From IMG/VR virus record IMGVR_UViG_3300035703_000010, positions 1-64,000 of that record: 64,000 nt of DNA; one strand, 5' to 3'. Position numbers and translations under genes: made by a program. The notes beneath the pieces are model-generated. The model was given only the letters and a program-made list of their open reading frames with translations. It made no database searches and was not told the DNA's origin. How positions within the stretch are numbered: the stretch's first letter is position 1; the number at the start of each line of letters is the position of its first letter. This document shows positions 22,689 through 47,300 of this stretch, piece after piece.

Positions 22689-22689
22689 T

Positions 22690-28892: not shown

Positions 28893-29194
28893 GATATCAT
28901 CCCATCTTCTTTTTCTTTTTCAAAAGGTACAATGACTTTGTTTGCAATTAATAACATAGCCTCTCTAGCGTTTTTTACATCTTTTACCATTGATATAACG
29001 ACTGGATCATCGAATAATACAGGAGATTTTAGATGCCTAGATACGTCTTGATAAGATTTATCTATAATGTCTAAAGATTCTTCTATTTGCGACCCTATCT
29101 CATCTATTTGCTCTACTAACTTTAACGATTTTTTTATCATCGTTAGTAGCGAAAACAATGTAATGAGATTTGTTATTAGTAAAAGATATATCAT
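28889..29194 (-). CDS. Small membrane-anchored coiled-coil protein
   Basis: N-terminal hydrophobic helix MIYLLLITNLITLFSLLTMI; overlaps both neighbours by 4 nt. Confidence 0.65.
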   Translation of the reverse strand: MIYLLLITNLITLFSLLTMIKKSLKLVEQIDEIGSQIEESLDIIDKSYQDVSRHLKSPVLFDDPVVISMVKDVKNAREAMLLIANKVIVPFEKEKEDGMIS

Positions 29195-30351
29195 GTTAAA
29201 TATTTCGAAAGTTTTTCATCATAAATCTTTGAAATTTGAGAATGGCTATACAGCTCAATTATTTTTTTTGAACCTTGTTCAGCCCATTCTTTTGGCGCAT
29301 TTGGAGCGCTTTTAAATTTTAAGATTTTTTTCTTAAAATCTTTTTCAACGGCTTCTGCCCATTTTGCATTTTTTACAAATATCTTTTCATCGACTCTACT
29401 TTGGTGTATTTGCTTAAGTTCATAATCTACATTTATGAACTTAGTATGATTCATAAAGTCCATATGTCCAGACCACCCAGTAGCGATGACAGGAAGACCA
29501 GATGCAGCTGCTTCTAGAAGAGGTAATCCATATCCTTCTCCTCTAGTTAAAGAAACTAAAGCTTTTATCTTTGGATGTTTATAAAGTGCAGATACGTCTT
29601 CATCGTTCATATCTCCATGAAGCAAATAAAATTTTGGAAATTGAGTTTTTCTTACTTCTTTAAGAAGAGCTTCTAAGTTTCTTAAAACAATATTTTTGTC
29701 TATCTTCGTATTTCTGCCTGCGTTTGTTTTTATTACTATTCCAACATCTTCATCTTTAGAAAATGTTTCACAAATCCACTTAATGGTAAAAAGTAAGTTT
29801 TTTCTATCATTATATGGATTGTTTCCGGTCATTTGTCCAAACAACAAAAAGTTAAATGAAGTCTTGATATTCGACAAGTCTATTTCTTTTTTAGACGTTA
29901 AAATTTCTTCTGGAAATGATTCAGGTATTATGTACGATGGTGTTTGTAACTCTGCTGAGTTTTGCAAACTTTGCAATGAATGTTTAGAAGGAACAACTAT
30001 GCAAGACATTTTATTGCAGTTTGAAACCCAAGATGGATTTGCTATATCCGTTTCAACTGCTGCAGTAATTCCAATGTTTGTTTTGCACAGATTTGGATCC
30101 CACTCATTCGGTAGTTGTAGCTGGATTGAAACGTCTGCTCTATAATCAGGATTAACTGTTCTTTCCATTATTTTTGAAATAAGACCATTGTCTTTATTTC
30201 TATCTAAAATCCATGGCGTGTCTCCCCATGGAGTTAATAAAAACTTAACATCTATATCATTTCTAGACAACAACCATTTTGCTACTTGTCTACTATGAAC
30301 GCCATATCCAGATTGAGTTAAAGCAGGCCCTCTAAAAATTACTTTTTTCAT
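29191..30351 (-). CDS. Glycosyltransferase family 4 (GT-B)
   Basis: SGYGVHSR N-terminal motif; VSLTRGEGYGLPLLEAAASGLPVIA (EX7E). Confidence 0.92.
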   Translation of the reverse strand: MKKVIFRGPALTQSGYGVHSRQVAKWLLSRNDIDVKFLLTPWGDTPWILDRNKDNGLISKIMERTVNPDYRADVSIQLQLPNEWDPNLCKTNIGITAAVETDIANPSWVSNCNKMSCIVVPSKHSLQSLQNSAELQTPSYIIPESFPEEILTSKKEIDLSNIKTSFNFLLFGQMTGNNPYNDRKNLLFTIKWICETFSKDEDVGIVIKTNAGRNTKIDKNIVLRNLEALLKEVRKTQFPKFYLLHGDMNDEDVSALYKHPKIKALVSLTRGEGYGLPLLEAAASGLPVIATGWSGHMDFMNHTKFINVDYELKQIHQSRVDEKIFVKNAKWAEAVEKDFKKKILKFKSAPNAPKEWAEQGSKKIIELYSHSQISKIYDEKLSKYLT

Positions 30352-30354
30352 TTT

Positions 30355-31599
30355 TCAAACCTCTGTAAGATTCCAGCTTTTGTATTTTTCGCTCCAGCTT
30401 TCGCATAAATCCGTCAAAGTTTCATCCCATTGTAAGATGACATTTTCGATATTGTAATCTTTTTGTGCATGTTCAAATGCTCTTTGACCAATTGATTTTC
30501 TTTTTTCAGGACCCCATTCATACATCTTCATAAACGCGTTTGTTAAAGATTCATGCGTGACATAATCTTCATAAATGTAAGGAACTAATTGATTTCCTAC
30601 AAGAGAGCTTGCATCAGGAGTTAGTGCAATTCCATATTGCTCACCAGTTTCATGATCTTCAACTTGTCGAGTCAAACCACCAGTTTTTATTGCTATAATT
30701 GGTTTTCCACACATCATTGCTTCTAATGTTGATAACCCAAATCCTTCATTACAGCTACGGTTTACAACCGTGTCGCAAGCGTTGTATAACTTGTTCATGT
30801 CTTTAAATTCTATTCTATCTTTTGAAAATACTACATGATCTCTTAGTCCCAACATTTCTACGACATGAAATAAATTTGGTCCTTCAGGATCTAACGGTTC
30901 AGTGTGCATTATTAATGTTGCTTTTGTATGACCGTGCTTTTCTCTTAATTGGTCAATGAACTTTTTCCAAGAAACGAGTATATCTGATGGCATTTTTCTA
31001 CGAGCATTTCTTGAAACGAATAACGCAGTAAAATGATCAACTTTTTCTTTTCCTAACAATGAAGACTTATATTTTTTTTGTTCTTCTTCAGGAAGAGGAT
31101 GATAGATTTCTTTAGGAATTGCATGAGGAATATAATTCGTTTTTTCAGGAAATCTTGAATGTACCATTTCATATGTTGGCCAATTAATACAATTTATTAA
31201 ATCGGTAGATTCATACAAAACTTTATTAAACTCTGGCCAAGGATAGTTATCCCATAGATGGTTATATGCTATTGGGCACACTTGATGAATTTCATCTTCC
31301 ATTTCCCAAACCCAAATAAAAAATCTTGGATCTGTAAAAAGCAATAAAACGTCGGGTTTTTCTGTAGCTAAAACCTGACGTAACATATTTCTATCTCCAA
31401 ATCCATTAGTGGGTTTGATTATAAAATCGTCGTTAACTACGACAGTTCTATAATCTTCATGTTTAACAGCTCCTCCAAAACACTTAAACTTCCATTTTCC
31501 AGTTGCGATTAATCCGTGAATTAACCACCTAGCTTGTGTACCTACGCCGCTTGAACTTAACGGATGGTCTGAAAGCATTAATACTGTTTTTTTCTGCAT
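30355..31599 (-). CDS. Glycosyltransferase family 4 (GT-B)
   Basis: SGVGTQAR; RNARRK; NEGFGLSTLEAMMCGKPII (EX7E). Confidence 0.92.
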   Translation of the reverse strand: MQKKTVLMLSDHPLSSSGVGTQARWLIHGLIATGKWKFKCFGGAVKHEDYRTVVVNDDFIIKPTNGFGDRNMLRQVLATEKPDVLLLFTDPRFFIWVWEMEDEIHQVCPIAYNHLWDNYPWPEFNKVLYESTDLINCINWPTYEMVHSRFPEKTNYIPHAIPKEIYHPLPEEEQKKYKSSLLGKEKVDHFTALFVSRNARRKMPSDILVSWKKFIDQLREKHGHTKATLIMHTEPLDPEGPNLFHVVEMLGLRDHVVFSKDRIEFKDMNKLYNACDTVVNRSCNEGFGLSTLEAMMCGKPIIAIKTGGLTRQVEDHETGEQYGIALTPDASSLVGNQLVPYIYEDYVTHESLTNAFMKMYEWGPEKRKSIGQRAFEHAQKDYNIENVILQWDETLTDLCESWSEKYKSWNLTEV

Positions 31600-31637
31600 G
31601 TCGTTATATTACTAACTTTTGAAAAATTTGTAATATT

Positions 31638-32456
31638 TTAAGTGCAGTGTTCACTATTTTTAAATTCACACCACGTACAAGCATCTCTATTCTTTAGAGC
31701 GATACCTCTTTTTACTGAGGTTATCATATTGCTAACAACTTTTAAAGATCGTTTAATAGGAACTTCTCCAAGCGAAACCGAGAACAATTCGCAATGTTCG
31801 CCTGGCTTCGCAGACTTTTTTAACAACACGAATCCACAACGTACATCTTTAACTGGGACATTGGGATGTTTTTGACACCAATAGTTTTTATAAAGCGCCA
31901 ACTGCGCCTTGACCATATCATCGGATCGTTTTTCACGAAACCAACCACGGGCGGTTGTCTTCCAGTCTAGGATCCAGTAAATAGTCTCTCCTCGCTTACC
32001 CTTAGCTTTAATGACACCGTCAATAAACCCCTTGAAAGCATGCGGATGATTCTCTACGGCTTCGTAGAGCTGATGTTCTGCGTCAACGACTTCCCATTCT
32101 GGAAAAGTATCGTCTAAAAACTTTGGAACTTCCGATAAAATAATTTCAGCTTCAACTTTAGCTTTAGATAATGACTGTTTACTAAAGTCTTGATTTCCTT
32201 CATGCTGTGCCCATGCTTTTTCCATGTGCTCAAAAGCAATTTCAAATTTCATTTCTCTAGTCAATAGATAATGTTCGCATGAAGCATGTACTGCAGTTCC
32301 AAATTCAAGAACAGGAGATGGTTTCGAAAGGTCAATTTTTTTGATATGGATAAGATTGTGTCTATACGAACACTCTTTCCATAGCTTAATTTCTGAAAAT
32401 GAAACATGAGGTTTACCAGTAGGTAATACCTCAAAAGGGGGTGTTACTTCTTGCAT
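31638..32456 (-). CDS. PD-(D/E)XK nuclease, Cas4/AddB-like with Fe-S cysteines
   Basis: SFSEI..W.EC, FGTAVH, KGFIDG, ILDWKT, QL.LY, C-terminal CTWC..C. Confidence 0.9.
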   Translation of the reverse strand: MQEVTPPFEVLPTGKPHVSFSEIKLWKECSYRHNLIHIKKIDLSKPSPVLEFGTAVHASCEHYLLTREMKFEIAFEHMEKAWAQHEGNQDFSKQSLSKAKVEAEIILSEVPKFLDDTFPEWEVVDAEHQLYEAVENHPHAFKGFIDGVIKAKGKRGETIYWILDWKTTARGWFREKRSDDMVKAQLALYKNYWCQKHPNVPVKDVRCGFVLLKKSAKPGEHCELFSVSLGEVPIKRSLKVVSNMITSVKRGIALKNRDACTWCEFKNSEHCT

Positions 32457-32488
32457 TTAACGATAGTAACACCCTCTTAATTGTTAGT

Positions 32489-33454
32489 TCAAACTTTAGG
32501 TTTCTTTGAGATTGCTCTACCTACTAGCTTTTCCCAATCTCTTTGTGGACGAACTTCCATGTTTTTGTGCCAAGCGCCATTCATTACTTTTGGATCTACT
32601 CCAAGCGTCTTTGCAATGCTAATCAAAGCGTTAATATCTTTAACAAAGCAGCTTCCTCCGAAACCGAAAGCAGGTTCTCCTGTATCATCTGCAGGCATTG
32701 GACCAGGAACTTTCCAATGCGAATTTCCTAGTCGCTTGTCTAAGGTCGCGTACTCAATTACTTTATCATAATCGATATTTGCTCCTGAAGAGTCTAAAGC
32801 TTGACAAATTTGATAAAACTCGTTTGCAAGAGCGACTTTGACAGCAAGATGAATGTTGGTAACATATTTTACCATTTCTGCTGTTGTTGATGAAGTTTTG
32901 ATAATTGGAACATTTGGAAATGCTGATTCAAAAACTTGCTTAACTTTGTTAATCCAAGGACGAGGGCCTCCAAGGATAATTCTGTTTTGATTTCGCATGT
33001 CATCGACTGCATTTGCTTCTGTTAAAAATTCTGGATTAAAAATCACTTTCAATCCAGTTTCAGCAAACTTTTTATTCCACATTTCTACTGAGCCTGGTGG
33101 AACGGTTGATTTGACGACTGCAATTCTTTCGCCTGGTACTGCGGCTAATTCTTTTAAAGCACCTTCGACGATGCTAAGATCGGCAGAGCCATCCTCAAAC
33201 ATAGGTGTAGGAAGGCACACAAAATAAACTTTAGAAAAGCCCGGTGTTCCACCTTCCTCATTATCTCCGATTAATTCTGCAATAGACCCAGGATAACCAG
33301 CAGCTGAATCTCCATGAGAAGGTAAAGATCCTTTAGCATATTTGCCTGCTTTGTCATAAGCATATACATCAAATCCGCGTTCTGAGAAAACAGTCGTAAG
33401 AGATCCTCCTACGAACCCTTGACCAATTACAGCGATAGATTTATTTTTTTTCAT
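32489..33454 (-). CDS. ugd: UDP-glucose/GDP-mannose dehydrogenase family, short form lacking C-terminal domain
   Basis: IGQGFVG Rossmann motif, VCLPTP, KSTVPPG, NPEFL.E, AEMVKY, GFGGSCFVKD catalytic Cys; only 321 aa. Confidence 0.88.
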   Translation of the reverse strand: MKKNKSIAVIGQGFVGGSLTTVFSERGFDVYAYDKAGKYAKGSLPSHGDSAAGYPGSIAELIGDNEEGGTPGFSKVYFVCLPTPMFEDGSADLSIVEGALKELAAVPGERIAVVKSTVPPGSVEMWNKKFAETGLKVIFNPEFLTEANAVDDMRNQNRIILGGPRPWINKVKQVFESAFPNVPIIKTSSTTAEMVKYVTNIHLAVKVALANEFYQICQALDSSGANIDYDKVIEYATLDKRLGNSHWKVPGPMPADDTGEPAFGFGGSCFVKDINALISIAKTLGVDPKVMNGAWHKNMEVRPQRDWEKLVGRAISKKPKV

Positions 33455-33486
33455 AGATTTTTATATAATCTAAAAAATGCTAAAGT

Positions 33487-34389
33487 TCATTTGATGACGT
33501 TGATAATGGATTTCCATCCTTCATCATTTCTGATAAACTCAACTGAAGAATTTATTTTTTCTTGAGTTTCTTCAACGTTATCAAGAGTTTTTGTTATTAA
33601 ATCCAAGGACTCTTCAAAACTTTTATAAGTCAAAATTGAAGAAATATTATTTGTGTAATTCACACATTCTTCCTCATAATCCCTAATGCTTATGCATCCT
33701 CGTGAAGCAGCTTCTATGTCTTTAACCCATAACGCGTTTGCTGATATTTTATTCGAATTTACAACCCATTCTACTTGTTCGTTGTGTATAAAAATTTTTA
33801 TTTTAGATAAATTTTGTAAAAAGCCGTTATAAGATGATTGTTGCAAAATCGTAACGTTAATATTTTTTGATTTTAAAAAATCAAAAAACTTTTTTCTATA
33901 AGGGTGAATTTGTCCACAAAATCCAACGTCAATTTCTCTATCCTTCCAAGCAGGATCAGAAGAACAATACTCTGGTAAAACCCACATTTTTACAAACGTA
34001 GATTTCATACCTTTATCGATGATAAAGTTACTCCACCATTTTGAAGTATTTAAAAACGATTTAACATTTAGTTCATTATAAATTTTTTGATACGATCCTT
34101 TGTAACGAGAATCATCTTTAAAAGATTCCCAAGGATCTTGTTCATATACGAATATTTCTTGATTGTTAAGATACTTTTTTACTAAAGAAATATTATTGTA
34201 CAGAGTTCTTAGTTTTAAACATGATAAAAACTTATCAGCATGAGGCAAACTTTTTCCTGAGGCTACGTCGGAAATAGTACTAAAACTAAGATTAGTTTCA
34301 TCTTGCAACGTTTTAAATAACTGATGTTGAAAACAATTGCTTTTTACATATTGGTAATCATCAATAATTACGTGAAGATTTAATTTCAT
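33487..34389 (-). CDS. Putative glycosyltransferase (CgeB/YkvP-like GT-B)
   Basis: REIDVGFCGQ.HPYR.....FL, KIKIFIH, K.IEAA.RGC pattern. Confidence 0.65.
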   Translation of the reverse strand: MKLNLHVIIDDYQYVKSNCFQHQLFKTLQDETNLSFSTISDVASGKSLPHADKFLSCLKLRTLYNNISLVKKYLNNQEIFVYEQDPWESFKDDSRYKGSYQKIYNELNVKSFLNTSKWWSNFIIDKGMKSTFVKMWVLPEYCSSDPAWKDREIDVGFCGQIHPYRKKFFDFLKSKNINVTILQQSSYNGFLQNLSKIKIFIHNEQVEWVVNSNKISANALWVKDIEAASRGCISIRDYEEECVNYTNNISSILTYKSFEESLDLITKTLDNVEETQEKINSSVEFIRNDEGWKSIINVIK

Positions 34390-35089
34390 TTAGTATTAAT
34401 TCCTTTGAATAATTTTTAATAGAAAAATTAAATGCATTTTGAAAATCATCATCAGAATAGTCTACATCATTATATTTTGATGAAAGATTAAATCCTAATA
34501 AACATAAACCTCTTATTTTATCGAAGTTATTTTTTTGCCAAGCATCATAAACTTTGTTGAAAATATCTGACTGATTTTTTTTGCCTCTATGAAACCCATA
34601 GTGAAATGCTTGTTTATCTGAAGGAAACCAACAATGCATTCCAGCGGGTATTAATTCTTTAGGAAGTTCATTTCCTCTAATAACAATGTTATGTCCAGAA
34701 TCTGCTCGATCTGGATATAACTTGTTTACTTTTGTTGATACGTTCACTGTATTTCTTAAACATGTGAGTCCGTATATTAGGCTATCGGTCATGTAATCAT
34801 GAAGCCATGCTTGAACTCCAGTTAGCTTATTATTAATTTTAAAAAGTTCAGCAAATGTTTTTATAACTAAATTGTGAGACAATATTGTGTCTGCATCTAC
34901 TTTTAAAAAAAGATCATAATCTTTTTTTGATTTATTCCATTCTAAAAAAAGCTTTTCATGTGCTTCTTTTTCAGGCAAGTTAGAAACAACATAATGAAAT
35001 GTTTGAACATCTATTTGAGAAGCTATCGATTCCTTGCATTTCTCAAATTCATTTTCTCCACACTCCATCGTTCCTACAAAAACTTTCAT
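34361..35089 (-). CDS. Putative glycosyltransferase (GT-A, DxD)
   Basis: YDLFLKVDADT DxD motif; island context. Confidence 0.65.
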   Translation of the reverse strand: MKVFVGTMECGENEFEKCKESIASQIDVQTFHYVVSNLPEKEAHEKLFLEWNKSKKDYDLFLKVDADTILSHNLVIKTFAELFKINNKLTGVQAWLHDYMTDSLIYGLTCLRNTVNVSTKVNKLYPDRADSGHNIVIRGNELPKELIPAGMHCWFPSDKQAFHYGFHRGKKNQSDIFNKVYDAWQKNNFDKIRGLCLLGFNLSSKYNDVDYSDDDFQNAFNFSIKNYSKELILNEIKSSRNY

Positions 35090-35107
35090 TTATTTCTCCA
35101 AATAAAA

Positions 35108-35599
35108 TTATAAAATTTTGTACATACAAATTTGATCAAAAAATTTTTCATCTCTGTATAAAGAAGAAATTAATTTACCTTCTTCTATAAACCCAAGATT
35201 TTTATATACTCTTTGACCTATTAGATTGTATTCTGCTGTCGTTAAACTTACTCTATGAAGTCCGATCTCTTTACAATAATCTAACATTAACGACCACATG
35301 AATTTTGCATATCCTTTACCTCTAAAATTTTTATGAATATCTGCTCCTAATATGCAATTTCTATTAGTAAAATCTATATTGTAAAATTTAGTAAATCCTA
35401 CTCTTTCAGAATTTATTTCAAATATTTTTCTTTTTTGAGAATTATCTTTTGATATTTTTTCCCACCAAGATAAATGTTGATTTAAAGTTATAGGATTTGG
35501 ATTGGTTAAATTTTTTAAAACTTCTGGATCATTGTGTAATTCAACTAACCATTCATGGTCGCCATGATTAATCTCTCTTAATATCATGTTTTGTTGCAT
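35108..35599 (-). CDS. GNAT N-acetyltransferase, PseH/RimJ-like
   Basis: LREI...D...L..L.ND, FRGKGYA acetyl-CoA motif, N......Y..LGF..EG; adjacent to the aminotransferase. Confidence 0.88.
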   Translation of the reverse strand: MQQNMILREINHGDHEWLVELHNDPEVLKNLTNPNPITLNQHLSWWEKISKDNSQKRKIFEINSERVGFTKFYNIDFTNRNCILGADIHKNFRGKGYAKFMWSLMLDYCKEIGLHRVSLTTAEYNLIGQRVYKNLGFIEEGKLISSLYRDEKFFDQICMYKIL

Positions 35600-35602
35600 A
35601 TG

Positions 35603-36742: not shown

Positions 36743-36745
36743 TTT

Positions 36746-37768: not shown

Positions 37769-37800
37769 TTTTATATTGTATTTTTTTACAAAAACGTTGT

Positions 37801-39757: not shown

Positions 39758-39775
39758 ATTATTTCTTTTATTAGA

Positions 39776-40687: not shown

Positions 40688-40696
40688 TTTTTAACC

Positions 40697-41584
40697 TCAG
40701 CTTAAAATAATCTTCCAAAACGATTCCATAGATTCTTTCCACTTTGGAGGAGTTTTAGAATTTTTTAAAAAATTTCTTTTTGATAATATCTGTTCAATTT
40801 CAAAGAAATTTTTATAAACATGTTGTTTACCTACAAATTCAACGGCGCCGCCTCCTTCAGCATGAACGTATGTTGGAAGTCCAACTGCAATTGATTCTAA
40901 AACGTGATTAGGTCCAGGATCATGTCTAGACGCGCTAACATAAACGTCATATTTACATAATTCATCAGCTAAAGCTTTTCCGTATAGCGGAGGTATCGTT
41001 TTTGAATTAGAAAAAGTTCCTCTATCTCTTCCTATATACGTGAATGATATTTTATCGTTTTTAGTACTTAAGTAATCTAAAAATTCGTAAACATCAAAAC
41101 CTTTTAAGTAGTTATTAGACCAATGATGAGTTACAATTTTTAAAACATCATCATTCTTTTCTTGATAATTTGTATTAAAAAAATCTTCATCAACTCCGTT
41201 ATATAAAACGGATTGATTTTTGCAAATCCACCCTTTGTTATTAAAGTAATTTTTCATCCAATTACTTACAAAAATAGTTTTTGTATTAATCGCGCTACAT
41301 TGTAATAACAATTGATCCATATGTTCTGTGTTTTTTCTTGCGTCACATTCATTAATCCTTTGAATGACGGGTATTTTTTTTCTTGATATAAATTTTGCAG
41401 CATCATTTATATCGAATGATTTATCTCTTCGAGGATCGACCAAAAAAATTAGATCAGTATCATCAGTTAACTTATCAGTTAATTCAACTCCATCTGGAAC
41501 AGATGAATAAACTGCTTTAACAAAATTATTGCCACCGCCGTACGGTCCAGAAATAGGAGCTCTATTAATTGCAATTTTAACCAT
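40697..41584 (-). CDS. Glycosyltransferase family 4-like
   Basis: GPYGGG, YNGVD, KG.D, DVYVSASRHDPGPNHVLES.AVGLP. Confidence 0.85.
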   Translation of the reverse strand: MVKIAINRAPISGPYGGGNNFVKAVYSSVPDGVELTDKLTDDTDLIFLVDPRRDKSFDINDAAKFISRKKIPVIQRINECDARKNTEHMDQLLLQCSAINTKTIFVSNWMKNYFNNKGWICKNQSVLYNGVDEDFFNTNYQEKNDDVLKIVTHHWSNNYLKGFDVYEFLDYLSTKNDKISFTYIGRDRGTFSNSKTIPPLYGKALADELCKYDVYVSASRHDPGPNHVLESIAVGLPTYVHAEGGGAVEFVGKQHVYKNFFEIEQILSKRNFLKNSKTPPKWKESMESFWKIILS

Positions 41585-41603
41585 TCATAAAATTTTATAA
41601 ATT

Positions 41604-42506
41604 TTATAATGATTGTATCAAAGTTCTATAAGGATCATATCCTTTAGGAAGTTTCCATTCTTCTACGTCTGGTATGCTAGGAATTGCAAAAGTTACATCG
41701 TCTGAAATTGACGATTGAGGTAAAATTTGAGAAGCAATTCCTATGTTTCTAGAAACCACTGGAATGTTTAAAAGACCGCATTCAATAAGCGATTGTGGAC
41801 CTCCTTCGCATCTAGCAGTTACAGGATATAAATCTAATGTTTGATATAGCTCATTAATCGTTTTTTGATCTGGTCTATCGAAATATGTAAATGAAATATT
41901 CGACGCAGTTAATCGATTGATAATATACTGCCTTCTCCATCCTGCTAAAACTACATGTAAATTTTGTTTTTCTTTTGACCATTTTTCTATTGCGTCAGCT
42001 AGAAGATCTGGTCCTTTTTCTAGTTTTGGAGAAATTAAGTCTTTACCTTCTGTATCTCTTTGAAATGATCCAATTAAAAATCCATTTTCAGGTAAATTAT
42101 GTTTTTTTCTTAGACTTTGTTTTTCTTCTGTTTGATACCAAATATTTTGATTTGCCCAATACTTTAATAAGTGAATAGGCTTAGAAGTAAACTTTCTAAT
42201 AAAGTCTGACGTTTGTTCATTGTAAACATGATATGCTGTAGTAATTTTATCTCTTAACAAAAAATTATGAACGTCAATGTCTTTAAACTTTTCTGGAACT
42301 ATATGATGTACTGTCGTTAGAACTTTTTTATTTTTTAATAGTCCTTTAAAAAACATTTGTTCCCAACACCAATCAGCAAGTAGCCAAACAACATCAGCGT
42401 CTTTGGGATTTAACACGCTGATATCTTTGTTGTCTTCATTCCACTCTTTTACAAAACGGTCAACAATCCAGTCTTCTGATGGCGGGAGGACATACACTTT
42501 ATTCAT
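41604..42506 (-). CDS. Glycosyltransferase family 4-like
   Basis: IGSFQRD, KGPD, DLYPVTARCEGGPQSLIEC....PVVS. Confidence 0.85.
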   Translation of the reverse strand: MNKVYVLPPSEDWIVDRFVKEWNEDNKDISVLNPKDADVVWLLADWCWEQMFFKGLLKNKKVLTTVHHIVPEKFKDIDVHNFLLRDKITTAYHVYNEQTSDFIRKFTSKPIHLLKYWANQNIWYQTEEKQSLRKKHNLPENGFLIGSFQRDTEGKDLISPKLEKGPDLLADAIEKWSKEKQNLHVVLAGWRRQYIINRLTASNISFTYFDRPDQKTINELYQTLDLYPVTARCEGGPQSLIECGLLNIPVVSRNIGIASQILPQSSISDDVTFAIPSIPDVEEWKLPKGYDPYRTLIQSL

Positions 42507-43438
42507 GAATGTAAAACGCTTTCTAAAAACGAAAGATAATCATTTAATGTTCGTTGCATTGAAACATCAAAACAGTGAGATAAATCATTCTTATGGGGTA
42601 AACGATTCTTTATTTGTGCTACGTCAATTTTAGGAGGATTATCGTAGTCAGTTAGTTCAAAGTTATATTCTTTTTCTTCTTTTAAAATAACTCCATACCC
42701 CTGAACTAGTTCTTTTGTTCCTCCATGTTCAGAACAAATAACTGGTGTTCCTTGTGATAAGGATTCTACTACAGTATTTGGACAATGGTCTAACCATGCA
42801 AGATGTAACATCCAATTAGCTGCAGAAAATATTTCTAAACAAACTTCGTGGGGTTGAGATCCTGCATAAAAAACGTGAGGATCAGCGACTTTTATTGGAT
42901 TAGATCCTAAAACTATAAGAGCAGCTGAAGAATAAAAATTTCTTAAATGTTTATATAACTCTATGTTTTGTAACAAACGTTTTTGAGGATGCCAATTTGC
43001 AGAACATACGAATAACATTTCGTATTGTTGTCTAATTTGTTCTAATACAGGTATTTGAAATTTTTTAATTTCTGGTGCATTAATACCGTTTCGAATTATT
43101 TCGAATTTTTTTGGATATCCCCACCACTTCGTAGTCATGCCTTTATCAAATGCTGACTGCCATATTACAGCATCAGCTGATTGATAAAGCTTTTTTATAG
43201 AAGAGTTTTTTGTTTCAAACTCTTCAGGAGAAAACCAAATTCCATCAAGCCTTTGAACAACTTTTTTTGCTAATGGTCTGCCAGTAGGTTCAATAAAAAC
43301 TATTGAAATTTCAGCTTTTCTACCATCATATAATTCAACTTCATGACCAGATTCTATTAACGCCATAGCTAATCTCTTTCCAAAAGAATTTGGACCAGAG
43401 TTTGAGCTCATATTAACGTTGTCAAGATGTATTTTCAT
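42503..43438 (-). CDS. Glycosyltransferase family 4-like
   Basis: SGP.SF..RL, IRNGI, KRL, LHLAWLDHCPNTVVESLSQGTPVICSEHGGTKELV. Confidence 0.88.
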   Translation of the reverse strand: MKIHLDNVNMSSNSGPNSFGKRLAMALIESGHEVELYDGRKAEISIVFIEPTGRPLAKKVVQRLDGIWFSPEEFETKNSSIKKLYQSADAVIWQSAFDKGMTTKWWGYPKKFEIIRNGINAPEIKKFQIPVLEQIRQQYEMLFVCSANWHPQKRLLQNIELYKHLRNFYSSAALIVLGSNPIKVADPHVFYAGSQPHEVCLEIFSAANWMLHLAWLDHCPNTVVESLSQGTPVICSEHGGTKELVQGYGVILKEEKEYNFELTDYDNPPKIDVAQIKNRLPHKNDLSHCFDVSMQRTLNDYLSFLESVLHS

Positions 43439-43800
43439 GATCTCTTTTTTACTTCAGCAATAAAAGGAATTGCAAATGGAGTCTTATTAAACATCATTGC
43501 CATCAAAGCAATTTCTTTTGTTTCTATGTTAGAAAGACTAGCTCTTTGCGTAAATATATTTGGATCTAACTCTTGATTTCCATTTATAGTTACAGCATCA
43601 TAATACATCTGTGCTATAAAATTTACAGATTCATTAGTCAAAGGAACTGAAGATTCTTTAATGATTTCAGATAAAGAAAAGAAAATATCTTGATAAATTT
43701 CTGAACAAATTTGTGGTGTTAGTTTTTCACCTTTTCTTTTAAATAAGCGTTCAGATAAAAGCTTAGAAATAGATTCATGAAGAGCTTCGCCTTGCATCAT
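43435..43800 (-). CDS. Hypothetical protein within glycosylation island
   Basis: 121 aa helical ORF with ATGA overlaps on both sides. Confidence 0.7.
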   Translation of the reverse strand: MMQGEALHESISKLLSERLFKRKGEKLTPQICSEIYQDIFFSLSEIIKESSVPLTNESVNFIAQMYYDAVTINGNQELDPNIFTQRASLSNIETKEIALMAMMFNKTPFAIPFIAEVKKRS

Positions 43801-44531
43801 TTTACATACCCTCTGTTCCTTAAAAAAACAGCTTCATCCCTTTGAAATATAGCATCATTTGTTTGATATGTTTCAGGAACATCATTAATTGTGTAATGAT
43901 ACATTACTCTAGGTAAGAAAAATCTTTTTTTAGAATTATGAAGAGCTGGTAAATAAATTGCTTGATCTCCTGCTCTTCTGATATAACTTCCATCTTCTCC
44001 TCTATAGTTTTCATCTTTTACTTCATTTAGTAATTTTTTTCTAAATGTTTTTAAATGACTAGAAACCCAAGCATGTTTATACGGATCAACTTCTTGTGAC
44101 ATTGGACAACTTATGTTTTTGTCACTAAATCCCCAACGATGAGCTGTCCATAAAGTATCACATGAAGTTTGAACATAAGCAGAATTGATTATCATCAAAC
44201 AATCAGAATCTGTTAGCCAGTCATCTGCATCAATTCTACAGACGATGTCTTCATCATCACACATTGATAACCCTTGTAATACATTTGCAACTTCCCATTT
44301 TTTTTCAGAGTTCCAAATATTAATGATTCTATTTTGATAAGTTTTTCCTAAGATATTTTTAAAATCATCACAAATTTGAAGAGATTTTTTTGAATGATTT
44401 TCTGAAGACACATCATCGATTAAAATAATTTTCCAATTATCATATGATTGACCGCAAATAGAATGAAGCATTCTGGGTAATGTTTCAGACGCATTATACA
44501 TTGGAGAAATAAACACAAATCTATTATTCAT
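43797..44531 (-). CDS. Glycosyltransferase family 2
   Basis: FISPMYNA, SI..QSY.NW.IILIDD.S, RIDADDWL. Confidence 0.9.
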   Translation of the reverse strand: MNNRFVFISPMYNASETLPRMLHSICGQSYDNWKIILIDDVSSENHSKKSLQICDDFKNILGKTYQNRIINIWNSEKKWEVANVLQGLSMCDDEDIVCRIDADDWLTDSDCLMIINSAYVQTSCDTLWTAHRWGFSDKNISCPMSQEVDPYKHAWVSSHLKTFRKKLLNEVKDENYRGEDGSYIRRAGDQAIYLPALHNSKKRFFLPRVMYHYTINDVPETYQTNDAIFQRDEAVFLRNRGYVK

Positions 44532-45238
44532 TTCATCATCTCATTTGCTTTTTTATAAGATTCATGCGTACCAGCATCTATCCAACCAGTTTCAACATTT
44601 GTGAAAGTTCCAATTCTGTTTTTTACCATGAAAGAGTTTATGTCGCTTACTTCATATTCTCCTCTTGCTGATGGTTTTAAACTTTTAATAACATTAAAAG
44701 CTTCTGGAGTGTAGCAATATACTCCGACTATAGCATCATTGCAAGTTGGATGTTTAGGTTTTTCAACTACATCGGCTATTTTTCCATTTTGATAAACTGG
44801 AATTCCGAATCTTTCTGGATCATGTACTTTTTTAGTAAACAACGCATAGTCATCGTTTGAATCGCTAAATTTTTTTATAGAGTTTGTTATTTTTGAGTAG
44901 TTTTCAAAAATATTGTCTCCTAAGATTGTTACAAATTTTTGATTTCCGACGAATCCTTCGCATAATTGAATTGCTGAAGCAATTCCGTTAGCTACTTCTT
45001 GTATGCAGTAATAAATTGAGCATCCATATTCAGTTCCGGAACCAAGCAACATGGCGAATTGTCCAATGTGCTCTTGTCTAGTAATAATGCAAATTTCCTT
45101 GATACCAGATTCTACTAAAAGATTTATAGAATGAATTATCATAGGCTTTTCGCCTACTGGAAGTAGACATTTACTGGTAAATTTTGTTAAAGGCTGAAGT
45201 CGACTGCTAATCCCTCCAGTTAGAATAATTCCTTTCAT
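44528..45238 (-). CDS. Sugar-1-phosphate nucleotidyltransferase, short RmlA/SpsI-like
   Basis: MKGIIL.GG..SRL.PLT....K.LLPV..KPMI, GIA.A, LGDNIF, PERFG, EKP, PS.RGE.E, W.DAGT.ES...AN. Confidence 0.9.
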   Translation of the reverse strand: MKGIILTGGISSRLQPLTKFTSKCLLPVGEKPMIIHSINLLVESGIKEICIITRQEHIGQFAMLLGSGTEYGCSIYYCIQEVANGIASAIQLCEGFVGNQKFVTILGDNIFENYSKITNSIKKFSDSNDDYALFTKKVHDPERFGIPVYQNGKIADVVEKPKHPTCNDAIVGVYCYTPEAFNVIKSLKPSARGEYEVSDINSFMVKNRIGTFTNVETGWIDAGTHESYKKANEMMK

Positions 45239-47175
45239 TTTTTATTCCTGTTTAACATGATTTTTGGTTGCGCTTTTTCAACTGTTAAATGAGGAGTTGT
45301 AGTTTTGCCATCCCATTTTTGATGCCAAATCCATCCGCCTAATTTTTCTTTAAGCTCTTTAGCTCTTTTTTCAATCATTTCGTCAGTAACTTCTTGCCAA
45401 GGATGATCAAACATCATATTTGAAGCTGAAGTATCTTCGTATTTTTTACCAGATAATGATTCCCAATGTTTTGTCCAATAATCTTTATATAATTTGATCT
45501 TTCTTTCAAGATTATACCAGCTATAATGAAAAACGCCTGGTAAATTATTAACGACATTATTAAACCAAGCATTATAGTCTTTTAATGCTTTTTGATTTCC
45601 TAATAATGCAGATCTTCTTATTTGATCTGCTTCTGCAGTATAGAATGTAACATGATTGATTCTATTTCCAGTTTTAGAATCAATCATGTCGCAACCATCT
45701 GTACCTTCAGCTGCATACAAATCTCCGTTAGAGTCATATCTTCTAAGTTCAACAGGAATGCCATGAGTTATGTTTTGCTTATTTCTACTTAACCTCCACT
45801 TCCAAGGCATGATATCAAGTCGAACCTTTTCAGGACCACCCCAATACTCAATGACTGGTAATGATATTAAATCAACATTTGCTGGAAACTTTGAACACAA
45901 ATCAATTATTTTTTCTGCATCTGACTCATGAACAATTTCATCTGAATCCATTTGCCAACAGAAAGTTGATTTACACATGGATCTTGCTTCTGCTTTTTGC
46001 ATTCCATCAAACACTGCAAATCGTGGATGGTTCCAATCTCTATGAATTTGTTTTATGACAATCTTGTCATTTTTTTCAGATAATTCTTTTAGTTTTTCCC
46101 ATGTGCCGTCAGAAGAACCTCCATCTACAACACATACTTCTTCGCAAAATTGAAGCATAGATTCGATGCATTCTACAAAAGGATAGTCTTGTTTAATGCA
46201 ATTATATACAGTTGTGTATCCACTTATAGATGGCTTATAATCCATCATCTTCTTTATTCCATTCCAAAAAATTGTTGGAGCTGTAAAAAGATATTCTTCA
46301 ATTTCTTTGATGTTTTCTGTATTAAACCATTCTTCATCTTTGTGTTGAACGTTATCATTAAGATGAAGCTTACATCCTAACAATTTTGCTTCTATAACCA
46401 TTCTTGGACACGTATCTTTTCCTTCAGGAAGATATACAAATCCTTCTGCTTTCGAAAACCTATTTAGCATTTCATCATATGAAATATTCCAAACTACGTC
46501 ATGCTCTTTTTTATTTTCTTGGCACCAAAGTTTCGCATTTTTAGCTCCTTTTACCCAAGAATCTGATCCAAGTACTATCCAAGATTTTCTAGGCGTAGAA
46601 GATGAATTAGATTGTTCTCTAAGAAGCTTGATCATTCCTAGAGTATTTTTTGAAAATACGCTGGATAAAACAATGTTCGTTTTTTCTAATAAAAATGGGA
46701 ATAAATTTAGATACCACTCTTTTTGAGCTTCTGACATCCACCATAGTCCTCTAGAACCATAGTAGAAAGCTGATATCAATTTTCCATTAAGTTGTTCTTG
46801 ACAATCGCAATCTTTTCCTGATGCTGATTTATGTTTTTCTGGGGATCTATATCGACAGTATTTATAGTCGTATTCTAATATGCTATATTTTAAATTTCCT
46901 ATGATGGTAGGAATTAATTCTGGATTCAATTGAGCAAAATTTCCAAATATCCAGAATTTGTCGACGCCTTGTTTAAGAAGATCTAAACTTAAATCTTTTG
47001 ATAAAATTTTTGTGTACGGAAGAGGACATTCATCTATTAAAGCTTGAGTTGTTAATTCTGCTCCTCCGACATAATGCTCTGCAAAAAGATCAGCAACAAA
47101 AATTATCTTTGCATCTTGTGGGATAGATAAATCTATCATTTTTGTGCTAAAAATACTTTCATTAAAGTTATTCAA
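45235..47175 (-). CDS. Bifunctional glycosyltransferase (GT-B + GT2 fusion)
   Basis: N-half: GGAELT, FVYLP.GKDTCPRMVIEAKLLGC; C-half: ISGYTTVYN, VVDGGSSDGT, QMDSDE. TTG start with GAGGG SD. Confidence 0.88.
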   Translation of the reverse strand: MNNFNESIFSTKMIDLSIPQDAKIIFVADLFAEHYVGGAELTTQALIDECPLPYTKILSKDLSLDLLKQGVDKFWIFGNFAQLNPELIPTIIGNLKYSILEYDYKYCRYRSPEKHKSASGKDCDCQEQLNGKLISAFYYGSRGLWWMSEAQKEWYLNLFPFLLEKTNIVLSSVFSKNTLGMIKLLREQSNSSSTPRKSWIVLGSDSWVKGAKNAKLWCQENKKEHDVVWNISYDEMLNRFSKAEGFVYLPEGKDTCPRMVIEAKLLGCKLHLNDNVQHKDEEWFNTENIKEIEEYLFTAPTIFWNGIKKMMDYKPSISGYTTVYNCIKQDYPFVECIESMLQFCEEVCVVDGGSSDGTWEKLKELSEKNDKIVIKQIHRDWNHPRFAVFDGMQKAEARSMCKSTFCWQMDSDEIVHESDAEKIIDLCSKFPANVDLISLPVIEYWGGPEKVRLDIMPWKWRLSRNKQNITHGIPVELRRYDSNGDLYAAEGTDGCDMIDSKTGNRINHVTFYTAEADQIRRSALLGNQKALKDYNAWFNNVVNNLPGVFHYSWYNLERKIKLYKDYWTKHWESLSGKKYEDTSASNMMFDHPWQEVTDEMIEKRAKELKEKLGGWIWHQKWDGKTTTPHLTVEKAQPKIMLNRNKK

Positions 47176-47213
47176 TTTTCCCTCAAAAATTACTGTTAAA
47201 GAATATTTAATTA

Positions 47214-47280: not shown

Positions 47281-47300
47281 TATTTATAATAGCTAAATAA

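What the first reader, a model, noticed from the sequence alone, without database searches (positions are those of the whole stretch)
29191..47175. 18 kb phage glycosylation island lacking any membrane export or polymerisation machinery
Seen: 19 co-oriented genes with about 12 GTs (GT4-like, GT2/GT-A, CgeB-like, one fusion). I see no obvious TM segments, Wzx/Wzy/ABC transporter or undecaprenyl-phosphate transferase. The island links by 4-nt overlaps (29191-29194, 28889-28892) into the sigma gene and baseplate block. Established: host O-antigen loci and seroconverting prophage gtr cassettes need membrane components; T4-type DNA glucosylation needs only 1-2 GTs. Inference: the acceptor is cytoplasmic (virion protein, or less likely DNA) and the glycan is a long, defined oligosaccharide.
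Basis: partly seen in the sequence, partly recalled or inferred. Interest (0 to 1): 0.8.

Follow-up and report, generated by a model that had tools for sequence, protein, structure and literature searches.

The report
Jumbo-phage cytoplasmic glycosylation island
An uncultured T4-like jumbo phage carries an 18-kb block of 12 soluble sugar-transferase genes plus rare-sugar synthesis genes and no membrane export parts, so it most likely sugar-coats its own particles inside the cell, though this is inferred and not shown.

Summary
Window 29191-47175 (-) has 19 tightly packed, co-oriented ORFs. Twelve are glycosyltransferase genes with 13 GT domains, one a GT-B+GT-A fusion. The rest are an RmlA-like nucleotidyltransferase, a PseB/PseC/PseH-like trio, a short NDP-sugar dehydrogenase, a PD-(D/E)XK nuclease and one unknown gene.

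- **No membrane machinery:** none of the 19 products has a TM segment. No Wzx, Wzy/ligase, phosphoglycosyl transferase or ABC-2 permease was found in the 204-kb contig or in four or five near-complete relatives, one of them complete.
- **Not a misassembly:** at least 92 metagenomic phage contigs show the same layout.
- **Composite structure:** the ends are conserved and the central cassette is exchangeable.
- **Best reading (about 0.45):** a lipid-carrier-free cytoplasmic pathway that glycosylates virion proteins. It resembles giant-virus fibril and mycobacteriophage virion glycosylation.
- **Main rival, DNA glycosylation:** the clade encodes cytosine C5-hydroxymethylases. However, a separate GT-epimerase-hydroxymethylase module lies 110 kb away. 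A cultured Flavobacterium phage with a homologous island has no glycosylated nucleoside reported in its DNA.

Large GT clusters in big phages are already described, so I rate this a new member of a known kind with an unresolved acceptor.

The parts
45235..47175 (-). 646-aa fusion glycosyltransferase: N-terminal GT-B (GT4-like, aa 20-315), GT-A/GT2 (aa 318-470), helical C-terminal domain. First gene of the island and a clade-wide core gene.
   Evidence: Pfam GT2. AF2 pLDDT 90.9. VIA Z 20.6 to GT4 enzymes. Foldseek best hit SunS/ThuS S-glycosyltransferases, 3e-11. 92 relatives found in IMG/VR, the 80 listed at 48-90% identity over the full length. None in GenBank phages.
44528..45238 (-). Sugar-1-phosphate nucleotidylyltransferase (RmlA/G1P-thymidylyltransferase-like)
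   Evidence: PF00483 6e-47. TIGR01208 2e-60, below the equivalog cut-off. Present in only 15 related loci.
43797..44531 (-). GT2 glycosyltransferase, conserved core
   Evidence: PF00535 6e-17. Found in 62 related loci, median 62% identity.
43435..43800 (-). Conserved 121-aa protein of unknown function
   Evidence: No Pfam, PHROG, NCBIfam or PDB match. Found in 55 related loci.
40697..43438 (-). Three short GT4-type (GT-B) glycosyltransferases (42503-43438, 41604-42506, 40697-41584), conserved core
   Evidence: PF00534 6e-9, 2e-9 and 4e-3. phrog_2170 glycosyltransferase 1e-5 for 40697. Found in 47-56 related loci.
33487..40687 (-). Exchangeable central cassette: GT2 (39776-40687), GT-B (38624-39757), GT-A (37801-38637), PseB-like 4,6-dehydratase (36746-37768), PseC-like aminotransferase (35603-36742), PseH-like N-acetyltransferase (35108-35599), GT-A (34361-35089), CgeB-like GT-B (33487-34389)
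   Evidence: Pfam and NCBIfam. Atlas structure matches. AF2 plus Foldseek for 34361. Found in only 6-29 related loci. Absent from the closest relatives but present at 61-81% identity in a more distant one. Lowest GC of the window, 0.275-0.31.
32489..33454 (-). Short NDP-sugar dehydrogenase: UDP-Glc/ManNAc dehydrogenase N-terminal and central domains, no C-terminal UDP-binding domain
   Evidence: PF03721 plus PF00984 only. TIGR03026 matches profile positions 2-295 of 413. Conserved at about 66-95% identity in 34 loci. G001 has both a full-length and a short copy.
31638..32456 (-). PD-(D/E)XK (Cas4/RecB-like) nuclease, conserved next to the GT4 pair
   Evidence: PF12705 1e-16. PHROG exonuclease 8e-20. 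Found in 68 loci. The same nuclease-GT-GT order occurs in Flavobacterium phage immuto; in Microcystis phage Mel-JY01 a GuaB gene sits between the nuclease and the GTs.
29191..31599 (-). Pair of GT4 glycosyltransferases (30355-31599, 29191-30351), the most conserved genes of the island
   Evidence: PF00534 3e-16 and 1e-9, with weak PF20706 and PF13524. Found in 69 and 78 loci, median 69% and 58% identity. Both genes have adjacent homologs in immuto and Mel-JY01; 30355 also has a homolog in RM378.
28889..29194 (-). Small ORF between the island and the sigma gene: 101 aa by longest ORF, probably 83 aa
   Evidence: JGI gene call is 83 aa. Conservation in G001 begins at residue 19.
28140..28892 (-). 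Probable late sigma factor (T4 gp55-like), conserved anchor on the downstream side of the island
   Evidence: phrog_234 1.2e-5. 140 relatives found in IMG/VR; the 80 listed are 62-95% identical.
47176..47300 (.). Divergent intergenic region upstream of the island. It holds one of only five TATAAATA sites in the genome (47281-47288, minus strand).
   Evidence: Promoter function is not shown.
1665..8480 (-). Three Ser/Thr/Gly-rich fibre-like proteins at the far end of the tail/baseplate block. They are candidate acceptors by inference only.
   Evidence: 26-28% Ser+Thr, the highest in the genome. Sequence inspected. GC 0.42-0.45.

Best explanation
The island is a self-contained cytoplasmic glycosylation toolbox of a T4-like jumbo phage.

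Proposed mechanism:
1. Phage enzymes make activated sugars. These are an NDP-hexose (RmlA-like), a UDP-2,4-diacetamido-2,4,6-trideoxyhexose (PseB/PseC/PseH-like, stopping before any nonulosonate step) and probably a uronic acid.
2. Twelve soluble Leloir glycosyltransferases add these sugars directly and stepwise to Ser/Thr-type sites on phage structural proteins. Candidates are capsid, decoration or fibre proteins.
3. No lipid carrier, flippase, polymerase or oligosaccharyltransferase is involved.
4. The conserved end genes would start and build the common part of the glycan. The exchangeable central cassette would add the strain-specific outer sugars, so close relatives carry different glycan 'serotypes'.

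Shown: gene content, lack of membrane parts, phage origin, and the pattern of conserved ends with a swapped centre.
Inferred: the protein acceptor, the order of steps and the number of glycans.
For: (1) There are 12 GT genes and 13 GT domains, all without TM segments.
(2) No Wzx, Wzy/ligase, PGT (both families) or ABC-2 permease was found in G000 or in the four or five relatives at least 86% complete that were searched for each family, including the complete DTR-bearing G001. No polytopic ORF occurs in G000 or G001. None lies on the island side of the 160 related loci, 2.8 Mb in all.
(3) The core GTs are as conserved as the baseplate and helicase genes across at least 80 contigs. They are therefore phage core functions, not recent morons.
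(4) The number of GTs and the sugars point to surface glycans. Ours makes a diacetamido-trideoxyhexose. A close relative instead has GFO_IDH x2, DegT x2, an acetyltransferase, an ATP-grasp enzyme and heptose-type genes. This far exceeds the 1-3 sugars known on phage DNA (10.1101/2023.12.21.572611; PMC13326640).
(5) NeuB is absent, so the Pse-like branch ends at a UDP-sugar usable by a Leloir GT.
(6) The GT-A domain of the fusion and the 34361 product both have the cytoplasmic peptide glycosyltransferase SunS as best PDB match.
(7) DNA glycosylation has its own candidate module next to the hydroxymethylase.
(8) Phage immuto has a homologous nuclease-GT4-GT4 block and an 11-kb sugar cluster. Its virion DNA contains only dA, dC, dT and fdPreQ1 (PMC10516641).
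(9) In Pontimonas phage phiPsal1, a distant GT homolog sits between the major capsid and neck genes.
(10) Precedents exist: Megavirinae fibril glycosylation clusters of 6-33 genes with rare bacterial sugars (PMC10117803), and mycobacteriophage capsid and tail-tube glycans (as summarised in PMC12619734).
Against: - No acceptor protein is identified and no glycoprotein data exist for this clade or for immuto.
- The clade encodes cytosine hydroxymethylases, so hmC DNA needing glycosylation is likely. G001 lacks the hydroxymethylase-linked GT. Outside its island it has only one Pfam-detectable GT.
- The GT4 pair is linked to a nuclease here. In Mel-JY01 and RM378 it sits among replication genes, which is a DNA-metabolism context.
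- The island reads into the late-sigma gene. That suggests expression before late genes, at the time of DNA replication.
- GT4-type GT-B enzymes do serve as DNA arabinosyl/glucosyltransferases in RB69, DLP3 and RL38J1 (PMC13326640).
- Peripheral GTs of O-antigen loci also lack TM segments. Absence of TM in the GTs alone is therefore weak evidence.
Confidence: 0.45

Rival explanations
1. DNA glycosylation. Some or all island GTs transfer sugars to 5-hydroxymethylcytosine in phage DNA, protecting it from host nucleases, as in T-even, RB69/DLP3 and RL38J1 phages. In the most plausible partial version, only the conserved nuclease-GT4-GT4 block serves DNA and the rest serves proteins.
For: - G000 and G003 have a MilA-type cytosine hydroxymethylase: PDB 5b6d 4e-45, Asp at the ThyA N177 position, D169 kept.
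- G001, G002 and G005 have a T4 gp42-type dCMP hydroxymethylase (1b49, 3.6e-74).
- An SDR sugar epimerase overlaps the hydroxymethylase gene by 4 nt in both G000 and G001, although the hydroxymethylase types differ.
- The PD-(D/E)XK nuclease is conserved beside the GT4 pair here and in immuto. It lies near the pair in Mel-JY01. In RM378 a GT4 homolog lies between a Pol I-like gene and ribonucleotide reductase.
- Known DNA GTs of RB69, DLP3 and RL38J1 are GT4-like GT-B enzymes that use phage-made NDP-sugars (PMC13326640).
- From memory, not tested: the T4 gene order 46/47 nuclease, a-gt, gene 55 resembles nuclease, GT4, GT4, sigma here.
Against: - Known DNA glycans have 3 sugars or fewer made by 3 GTs or fewer. 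Here there are 13 GT domains.
- A dedicated GT-SDR-hydroxymethylase cluster exists 110 kb away and recurs in other jumbo contigs, one with a UDP-galactopyranose mutase.
- No T4 alpha- or beta-GT family member is present.
- Mel-JY01 and RM378 have GT4 homologs but no thymidylate-synthase-family gene.
- Phage immuto DNA shows no glycosylated nucleoside.
- G004 (93% complete) has the fusion GT, the island's anchor gene, but no match to the hydroxymethylase query.
Confidence: 0.22
2. Remodelling of a host envelope polysaccharide. The soluble phage GTs and sugar-nucleotide enzymes act on the host's own undecaprenyl-linked intermediates. They rely on the host's initiating transferase, flippase and polymerase, and change the cell surface during infection (superinfection exclusion or grazing avoidance). 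This has been proposed for the 'LPS/cell-wall' gene clusters of large cyanophages.
For: - Peripheral GTs of O-antigen and capsule loci also lack TM segments.
- Conserved flanks with a low-GC variable centre mimic O-antigen loci.
- Large cyanomyoviruses with 13 GTs and sugar epimerases are interpreted this way (PMC12801897).
- The likely hosts, suggested by the hosts of the nearest cultured phages with the GT pair, have many surface-polysaccharide loci (own knowledge).
Against: - No relative encodes any membrane step, even those with 28-kb islands.
- Diacetamido-trideoxyhexoses normally enter lipid-linked glycans through a membrane phosphoglycosyl transferase, which is missing.
- The core GTs are conserved at 50-70% identity across a broad phage clade, whereas host surface glycans vary from strain to strain.
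- The phages appear lytic. No integrase was looked for, so this point is not tested.
Confidence: 0.15
3. Other soluble acceptors. The GTs might modify host proteins, small molecules or lipids, or build a free cytoplasmic polysaccharide, as a takeover or counter-defence function.
For: The GT4 pair gives weak matches to PF20706 'GT4 in conflict systems'. No acceptor is identified.
Against: Twelve GTs plus rare-sugar pathways and a cassette-type variable region are hard to explain for an intracellular target. There is no precedent of this size.
Confidence: 0.08
4. Artefact. The island is host chromosomal DNA misassembled into a phage contig.
For: The gene content resembles bacterial polysaccharide loci. 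GC is somewhat lower than the contig mean.
Against: - The same anchor genes (fusion GT on one side, sigma and baseplate on the other) and the same core island genes occur in at least 80 IMG/VR contigs from many samples. These include a 369-kb genome with terminal repeats.
- An independent Logan assembly of SRR11566518 reproduces 12.7 kb of the island gene for gene.
- There is tight operon packing into phage genes.
Confidence: 0.01

Closest known systems
Megavirinae (Mimivirus-group) fibril glycosylation gene clusters and chlorovirus capsid glycosylation
   Same: - Virus-encoded clusters of 6-33 genes combine nucleotide-sugar pathways for rare bacterial amino-sugars with soluble, often multi-domain GTs.
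- Cluster content is clade-specific.
- Glycans are built without the cell's membrane glycosylation route (PMC10117803).
- Foldseek matches of our models include Mimivirus R699 and PBCV-1 A64R.
   Different: Those are eukaryotic giant viruses whose glycans have been chemically characterised on fibrils or capsid. Here the host is bacterial, the virus is a T4-like tailed phage, and no glycan or acceptor has been observed.
Mycobacteriophage virion glycosylation (Freeman et al. 2023, as summarised in PMC12619734)
   Same: Phage-encoded soluble GTs modify capsid and tail-tube subunits in the cytoplasm, with no export machinery.
   Different: From own knowledge, those phages carry only a few GT genes and no rare-sugar pathway. 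Here there are 12 GT genes, 5 sugar-nucleotide genes and a swappable cassette. No Ser/Thr-rich C-terminal tail on the capsid protein was looked for.
'LPS / cell-wall synthesis and modification' clusters of large cyanomyoviruses (P-SSM2, S-SCSM1, S-SCSM2R)
   Same: Large T4-like phages with up to 13 GTs plus NDP-sugar epimerases. The acceptor has never been determined (PMC12801897).
   Different: - No sequence relationship was tested.
- S-SCSM2R also has Kdo genes and an export-related PgaA homolog.
- Our clade's genes form one contiguous island between fixed anchor genes.
Flavobacterium phage vB_FspM_immuto gp87-gp101 (cultured, 160 kb)
   Same: It has the same nuclease - GT4 - GT4 order (31-32% identity over the full length). 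This is followed by GT2, aminotransferases, an acetyltransferase ('pilin glycosylation protein'), an NDP-sugar epimerase and more GTs.
   Different: - It is a smaller genome with no homolog of the 646-aa fusion.
- Its island sits downstream of the GT pair.
- Its DNA carries a deazaguanine (fdPreQ1), not a cytosine modification (PMC10516641).
Phage DNA sugar hypermodification (T4 glucosyl-hmC; RB69/DLP3 arabinosyl-5hoC; RL38J1; 5mYOX-linked GTs)
   Same: Soluble GT-A or GT4-like GT-B enzymes use phage-made NDP-sugars on a hydroxylated cytosine. Our genome has a cytosine hydroxymethylase, two SDR epimerases and a GT in one cluster.
   Different: That cluster lies outside the island. The island has four or more times as many GTs as any known DNA pathway. 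No T4 alpha- or beta-GT family member is present.
Wzx/Wzy- or ABC-dependent O-antigen and capsule loci; gtrABC seroconversion cassettes
   Same: Sugar-nucleotide genes plus many GTs, with a low-GC variable centre between conserved flanks.
   Different: All membrane parts are missing: initiating transferase, flippase, polymerase/ligase and GtrA/GtrC-type proteins.

Membership tests
Wzx/Wzy- or ABC-transporter-dependent surface polysaccharide locus | Initiating phosphoglycosyl transferase (Bac_transf PF02397 or WecA/MraY-type PF00953) | tested here: not met
   No match in G000 or in G001-G005. Controls ring in 10-13 of 14 genomes.
Wzx/Wzy- or ABC-transporter-dependent surface polysaccharide locus | Flippase (Wzx PF01943) or ABC-2 permease (PF01061) | tested here: not met
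   No match. No polytopic ORF in G000 or G001, and none on the island side of the 160 related loci.
Wzx/Wzy- or ABC-transporter-dependent surface polysaccharide locus | Polymerase or ligase (Wzy_C PF04932) | tested here: not met
   No match in G000, G001, G002, G004 or G005.
Wzx/Wzy- or ABC-transporter-dependent surface polysaccharide locus | Sugar-nucleotide genes plus several GTs, with a variable centre between conserved flanks | tested here: met
gtrABC-type seroconversion cassette | Small GtrA flippase, membrane-anchored GtrB and polytopic GtrC | tested here: not met
   No TM segment in any island product. No polytopic ORF in the contig. GtrA Pfam itself was not searched. The GtrB-like PHROG match of the fusion is marginal (E 0.007).
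T4-type DNA glucosylation | Cytosine (dCMP) C5-hydroxymethylase in the genome | tested here: met
   G000:160480-161481 is MilA-type with Asp at the N177 position. It lies 113 kb from the island.
T4-type DNA glucosylation | GT of the T4 alpha-GT (PF11440) or beta-GT (PF09198) family | tested here: not met
   No match in G000 at E<=1. The general GT-B fold similarity to 1y6f (Z 16.7) is lower than to many GT4 enzymes.
T4-type DNA glucosylation | Glycosylated nucleosides in virion DNA | not testable with these tools
   There is only an indirect datum. Phage immuto, which has a homologous GT pair and sugar cluster, shows dA, dC, dT and fdPreQ1 only (PMC10516641).
Virus-encoded autonomous virion glycosylation (Megavirinae, chlorovirus, mycobacteriophage type) | Virus-encoded soluble GTs, with or without sugar-nucleotide pathways, and no lipid-carrier machinery | tested here: met
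Virus-encoded autonomous virion glycosylation (Megavirinae, chlorovirus, mycobacteriophage type) | Clade- or strain-specific variation of cluster content | tested here: met
   The central cassette is replaced in the closest relatives. The anchor-to-anchor distance is 16-29 kb.
Virus-encoded autonomous virion glycosylation (Megavirinae, chlorovirus, mycobacteriophage type) | Glycans demonstrated on structural proteins | not testable with these tools
   The phage is known only from metagenomes. The candidate acceptors (fibres 1665-8480; gp23-like capsid protein G000:84888-86822) are inference.
Pseudaminic acid (Pse) biosynthesis pathway | PseB, PseC and PseH equivalogs | tested here: inconclusive
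   The best NCBIfam hits are PseB (271 bits, cut-off 408), PseC (244, cut-off 424) and PseH (62, cut-off 93). All fall below the equivalog cut-offs.
Pseudaminic acid (Pse) biosynthesis pathway | Nonulosonate synthase PseI (NeuB family), with PseG and PseF | tested here: not met
   No NeuB (PF03102) in G000, G001, G002, G003 or G005. No CMP-transferase hit in the island. The pathway therefore stops at a UDP-diacetamido-trideoxyhexose.
'Moraphage' lineage of aquatic jumbo phages (PMC12619734) | Membership by marker-gene phylogeny. Described traits are 200-307 kb genomes, four core GT orthogroups, a sigma factor and no RNA polymerase. | not tested
   The sequences of those genomes were not available to the tools. 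The traits are compatible, but relatives here reach 369 kb.

The most novel reading that the evidence does not exclude
A widespread clade of uncultured T4-like jumbo phages coats its virions with complex glycans built wholly in the cytoplasm. The outer part of the glycan is encoded by a recombination-exchangeable cassette between fixed anchor genes. This would be a phage equivalent of O-antigen serotypes, with the same phages separately glycosylating their hmC DNA through a second, dedicated module.
Probability: 0.35. Interest if true: 0.75.

Novelty: new member of a known kind. Interest (0 to 1): 0.5.

Why it matters
If virions of abundant aquatic jumbo phages carry variable glycan coats, several things follow.
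- Particle stability, host recognition, grazing and any antibody or lectin recognition would depend on a phage-encoded 'serotype'. It could be read from the cassette.
- The island is a compact source of soluble, carrier-independent GTs and rare-sugar enzymes for glycoengineering.
- The finding sharpens an old open question: what do the large GT clusters of big phages act on? It offers a testable system, namely the cultured Flavobacterium phage immuto with a homologous block.
- It also separates a candidate DNA-glycosylation module from a probable protein-glycosylation island in one genome.

Tried and rejected
- **Nucleotide and protein searches of GenBank phages.** Megablast of the island found no match. 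tblastn of the fusion GT found no match.
- **My first reading was wrong.** I read it as 'the hydroxymethylase is present in only 1 of 5 relatives, so DNA is excluded'. The shorter homologs are T4 gp42-type dCMP hydroxymethylases. I withdrew the argument.
- **Promoter timing led nowhere.**
  - Sigma-70-like sites are not above chance (81 found against 90 expected).
  - TATAAATA occurs only 5 times in the genome. Two are intergenic, including upstream of the island and of a fibre gene. That is too few to be the general late promoter.
  - AATATTTA is enriched upstream of genes (9 of 15 occurrences), but its role is unknown.
- **PDB profile searches.** Searches for 34361 and for the 121-aa protein gave no hit. 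hhalign of 34361 against the GT2 family gave only weak support (probability 11%). AF2 plus Foldseek later settled 34361 as GT-A.
- **N-terminal TM segment of the 101-aa ORF.** It is probably an artefact of the longest-ORF start.
- **Full pseudaminic acid pathway.** Rejected, because NeuB is absent.
- **Not used:** Read laying and the look-up of sequencing runs, since read data cannot reveal the acceptor.

Full report
**Context**

The window is the first 64 kb of a single 204,651-bp IMG/VR contig (JGI 3300035703, Ga0310140_0000123). The contig has 36% GC, is linear, and CheckV estimates it at 60% complete.

It is a tailed phage of the T4 type:
- gp25- and J/gp6-like baseplate genes at 20853-23154;
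- a gp55-like late sigma at 28140-28892;
- a gp23-family capsid protein at G000:84888-86822;
- ClpP, a helicase, PhoH and a ligase.

No near relative exists among GenBank phages. IMG/VR, however, holds at least 140 contigs with the sigma homolog and at least 92 with the island's first gene. They include genomes of 309-369 kb, one with terminal repeats. The 'moraphage' lineage of aquatic jumbo phages has four core GT orthogroups and a sigma factor (PMC12619734). It may be the same or a related group, but I could not test that.

**The observation**

Nineteen minus-strand ORFs fill 29191-47175 with overlaps or gaps of 38 nt or less. In order of transcription they are:

| Coordinates | Product | Evidence |
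|---|---|---|
| 45235-47175 | 646-aa fusion | see below |
| 44528-45238 | RmlA-like nucleotidyltransferase | |
| 43797-44531 | GT2 | |
| 43435-43800 | conserved 121-aa unknown | |
| 42503-43438, 41604-42506, 40697-41584 | three short GT4 enzymes | |
| 39776-40687 | GT2 | |
| 38624-39757 | GT-B | |
| 37801-38637 | GT-A | |
| 36746-37768, 35603-36742, 35108-35599 | PseB-, PseC- and PseH-like enzymes | |
| 34361-35089 | GT-A | AF2 pLDDT 91; only GT-A matches; |
| 33487-34389 | CgeB-like GT-B | |
| 32489-33454 | NDP-sugar dehydrogenase lacking its C-terminal domain | |
| 31638-32456 | PD-(D/E)XK nuclease | |
| 30355-31599, 29191-30351 | two GT4 enzymes | |

The AF2 model of the fusion (pLDDT 90.9) shows a GT4-like GT-B domain at residues 20-315 (Z 20.6). 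A GT-A domain and a helical tail follow. The best PDB matches of that part are the cytoplasmic peptide S-glycosyltransferases SunS and ThuS.

None of the 19 products has a hydrophobic segment. Two details need correction. The 4-nt overlap at 29191-29194 and the 'TM' of the small ORF both depend on an upstream start. That start is probably not used.

**No membrane machinery, also in complete relatives**

- Wzx, Wzy_C, Bac_transf, WecA/MraY-type transferases and ABC-2 permeases are absent from G000 and from the four or five relatives searched for each family. Positive controls ring in 10-14 of 14 genomes.
- A six-frame hydropathy scan finds no polytopic ORF in G000 or in the complete 369-kb G001. 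It finds none on the island side of the 160 related loci, 2.8 Mb in all.
- NeuB is absent, so the Pse-like branch ends at a UDP-2,4-diacetamido-2,4,6-trideoxyhexose.

**Phage origin and architecture**

The misassembly idea is refuted. The fusion GT on one side and sigma plus baseplate on the other bracket the island in many contigs from many samples. An independent Logan assembly reproduces 12.7 kb of it.

The island is composite:
- **Conserved in 47-80 loci at 43-69% median identity:** the fusion, the GT2 at 43797, the 121-aa gene, the three short GT4s, the nuclease and the terminal GT4 pair.
- **Found in only 6-29 loci:** the block 33487-40687. The RmlA-like gene (15 loci) and the short dehydrogenase (34 loci) are also patchy.
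- **Cassette exchange:** relatives whose flanks are 80-95% identical lack the central cassette. A more distant phage has it in the same order at 61-81% identity.
- **A different cassette in a close relative:** one has instead two GFO_IDH oxidoreductases, two aminotransferases, a hexapeptide acetyltransferase, an ATP-grasp enzyme and kinase/phosphatase/cytidylyltransferase genes.
- **Unrelated insertions:** in G001 the island is 28 kb. It contains NAD-salvage and other unrelated genes between the dehydrogenase and the nuclease.
- **Composition:** the cassette has the lowest GC of the window.

This is the pattern of a serotype-type locus, not of one fixed operon for one defined oligosaccharide.

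**The DNA rival**

G000 encodes a thymidylate-synthase homolog at 160480-161481. Its best structural relatives are MilA CMP hydroxymethylases (4e-45, against 1e-19 for ThyA). It has Asp at the ThyA N177 position and keeps D169. By the rule in PMC13326640 this indicates a cytosine hydroxymethylase, not a 5-hydroxycytosine synthase.

I first misread the shorter homologs of G001, G002 and G005 as plain ThyA. They are T4 gp42-type dCMP hydroxymethylases (3.6e-74). Five of six genomes therefore probably make hmC DNA, and DNA glycosylation in this clade is likely.

However, the hydroxymethylase sits in its own module. An SDR sugar epimerase overlaps it by 4 nt in both G000 and G001, although the hydroxymethylase types differ. 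In G000 the module also holds a second SDR and a 341-aa protein whose homologs carry the CgeB-like GT domain. The order GT - SDR - hydroxymethylase - SDR - TK recurs in other jumbo contigs, one with a UDP-galactopyranose mutase. This resembles the epimerase-plus-GT pathways of Pyle et al. (10.1101/2023.12.21.572611) and RL38J1 (PMC13326640). DNA glycosylation therefore has a better candidate than the island.

Points that keep the rival alive:
- G001 lacks that GT. Outside its island it has only one Pfam-detectable GT.
- The nuclease-GT4-GT4 block is conserved. In Mel-JY01 and RM378 the GT4 homologs sit among replication genes.
- GT4-like enzymes do glycosylate DNA in RB69, DLP3 and RL38J1.

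Points against it:
- Mel-JY01 and RM378 have no thymidylate-synthase-family gene.
- No T4 alpha- or beta-GT family member is present.
- Known DNA glycans need three GTs or fewer.

**Evidence from a cultured phage**

Flavobacterium phage vB_FspM_immuto carries nuclease (gp87), GT (gp89) and GT (gp90) in the same order, at 31-32% identity. An 11-kb cluster of GTs, aminotransferases, an acetyltransferase and an epimerase follows.

LC-UV-MS of its virion DNA showed dA, dC, dT and fdPreQ1 replacing dG. No sugar-bearing nucleoside was reported (PMC10516641). This is indirect, but it is the only experimental datum bearing on the acceptor, and it points away from DNA.

A distant homolog in Pontimonas phage phiPsal1 lies between the major capsid and neck genes.

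**Verdict**

The most likely function (about 0.45) is carrier-free cytoplasmic glycosylation of virion proteins. The Ser/Thr-rich fibres at 1665-8480 and the capsid protein are candidate acceptors.

| Reading | Probability |
|---|---|
| Virion protein glycosylation | about 0.45 |
| DNA glycosylation by part or all of the island | about 0.22 |
| Host-envelope remodelling through host membrane machinery | about 0.15 |
| Other soluble acceptors | about 0.08 |
| Misassembly | about 0.01 |

Large GT and sugar clusters in large phages and giant viruses are already described (PMC12801897, PMC10117803, PMC12619734). This is therefore a new member of a known kind.

Its useful new features are the fixed-anchor, swappable-cassette architecture, the clade-wide absence of membrane parts, and the coexistence of a separate DNA-modification module.

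Noticed in passing
G000:C1:155744-162536 (outside the window; loci L166, L189): A probable DNA hypermodification module: CgeB-like GT (341 aa), SDR, 259-aa ORF, Zn-ribbon, 239-aa ORF (-), SDR, MilA-type cytosine C5-hydroxymethylase, thymidine kinase, dCMP deaminase. The GT-SDR-hydroxymethylase-SDR-TK order recurs in other jumbo-phage contigs, one with a UDP-galactopyranose mutase.
   Followed up: partly
G000:160480-161481 versus G001:C1:181786-182553 (L164:1423-2190): Non-orthologous displacement in place. The same SDR-[hydroxymethylase]-TK slot holds a MilA-type enzyme in G000 and G003 and a T4 gp42-type dCMP hydroxymethylase in G001. G002 and G005 also have the gp42 type, but their gene neighbourhood was not examined.
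   Followed up: partly
G000:C1:150312-155206 (L166:312-5206): The DnaE-type DNA polymerase III alpha gene is split into two ORFs carrying intein splicing halves. A 314-320-aa ORF lies between them, possibly a homing endonuclease.
   Followed up: no
window 1665-8480 (-); also G000:182204-185083: Three consecutive fibre-like proteins have 26-28% Ser+Thr and about 13% Gly, with local GC of 0.42-0.45 against 0.30-0.35 nearby. A fourth such protein lies elsewhere in the contig.
   Followed up: partly
window 32489-33454 (-): An NDP-sugar dehydrogenase lacks the C-terminal UDP-binding domain, yet it is conserved at 66-95% identity in 34 loci. G001 keeps a full-length copy beside the short one. It is therefore probably a functional short form, not a pseudogene.
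   Followed up: partly
window 28889-29194 (-): The longest ORF (101 aa) begins with a hydrophobic stretch. JGI aa, and conservation in G001 starts at residue 19. An AATATTTA motif sits just upstream, at 29197.
   Followed up: partly
whole contig; window sites 6867, 8597, 29197, 47202: The octamer AATATTTA is 12-fold enriched within 100 nt upstream of gene starts (9 of 15 genome occurrences). TATAAATA is strongly depleted: 5 in 204 kb, 2 of them intergenic. Either could be a phage promoter element.
   Followed up: partly
G001:C1:331088-336960 (L188:11088-16960): In the complete relative, NAD-salvage genes (NMNAT-Nudix, NAMPT), a dual-specificity phosphatase, PTH2, a tRNA-binding protein and an HD protein are inserted between the sugar dehydrogenase and the nuclease. 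This site is an insertion hot spot.
   Followed up: no
G000:C1:203637-203993 (-): This is the only Pfam-detectable GT (GT2, ORF 437 aa) outside the island. It lies at the very end of the contig.
   Followed up: no
window 47967-49166 (+), 50209-50814 (+): A divergent GroEL-like protein (phrog_5725) and a ClpP protease are encoded just across the divergent promoter region from the island.
   Followed up: no
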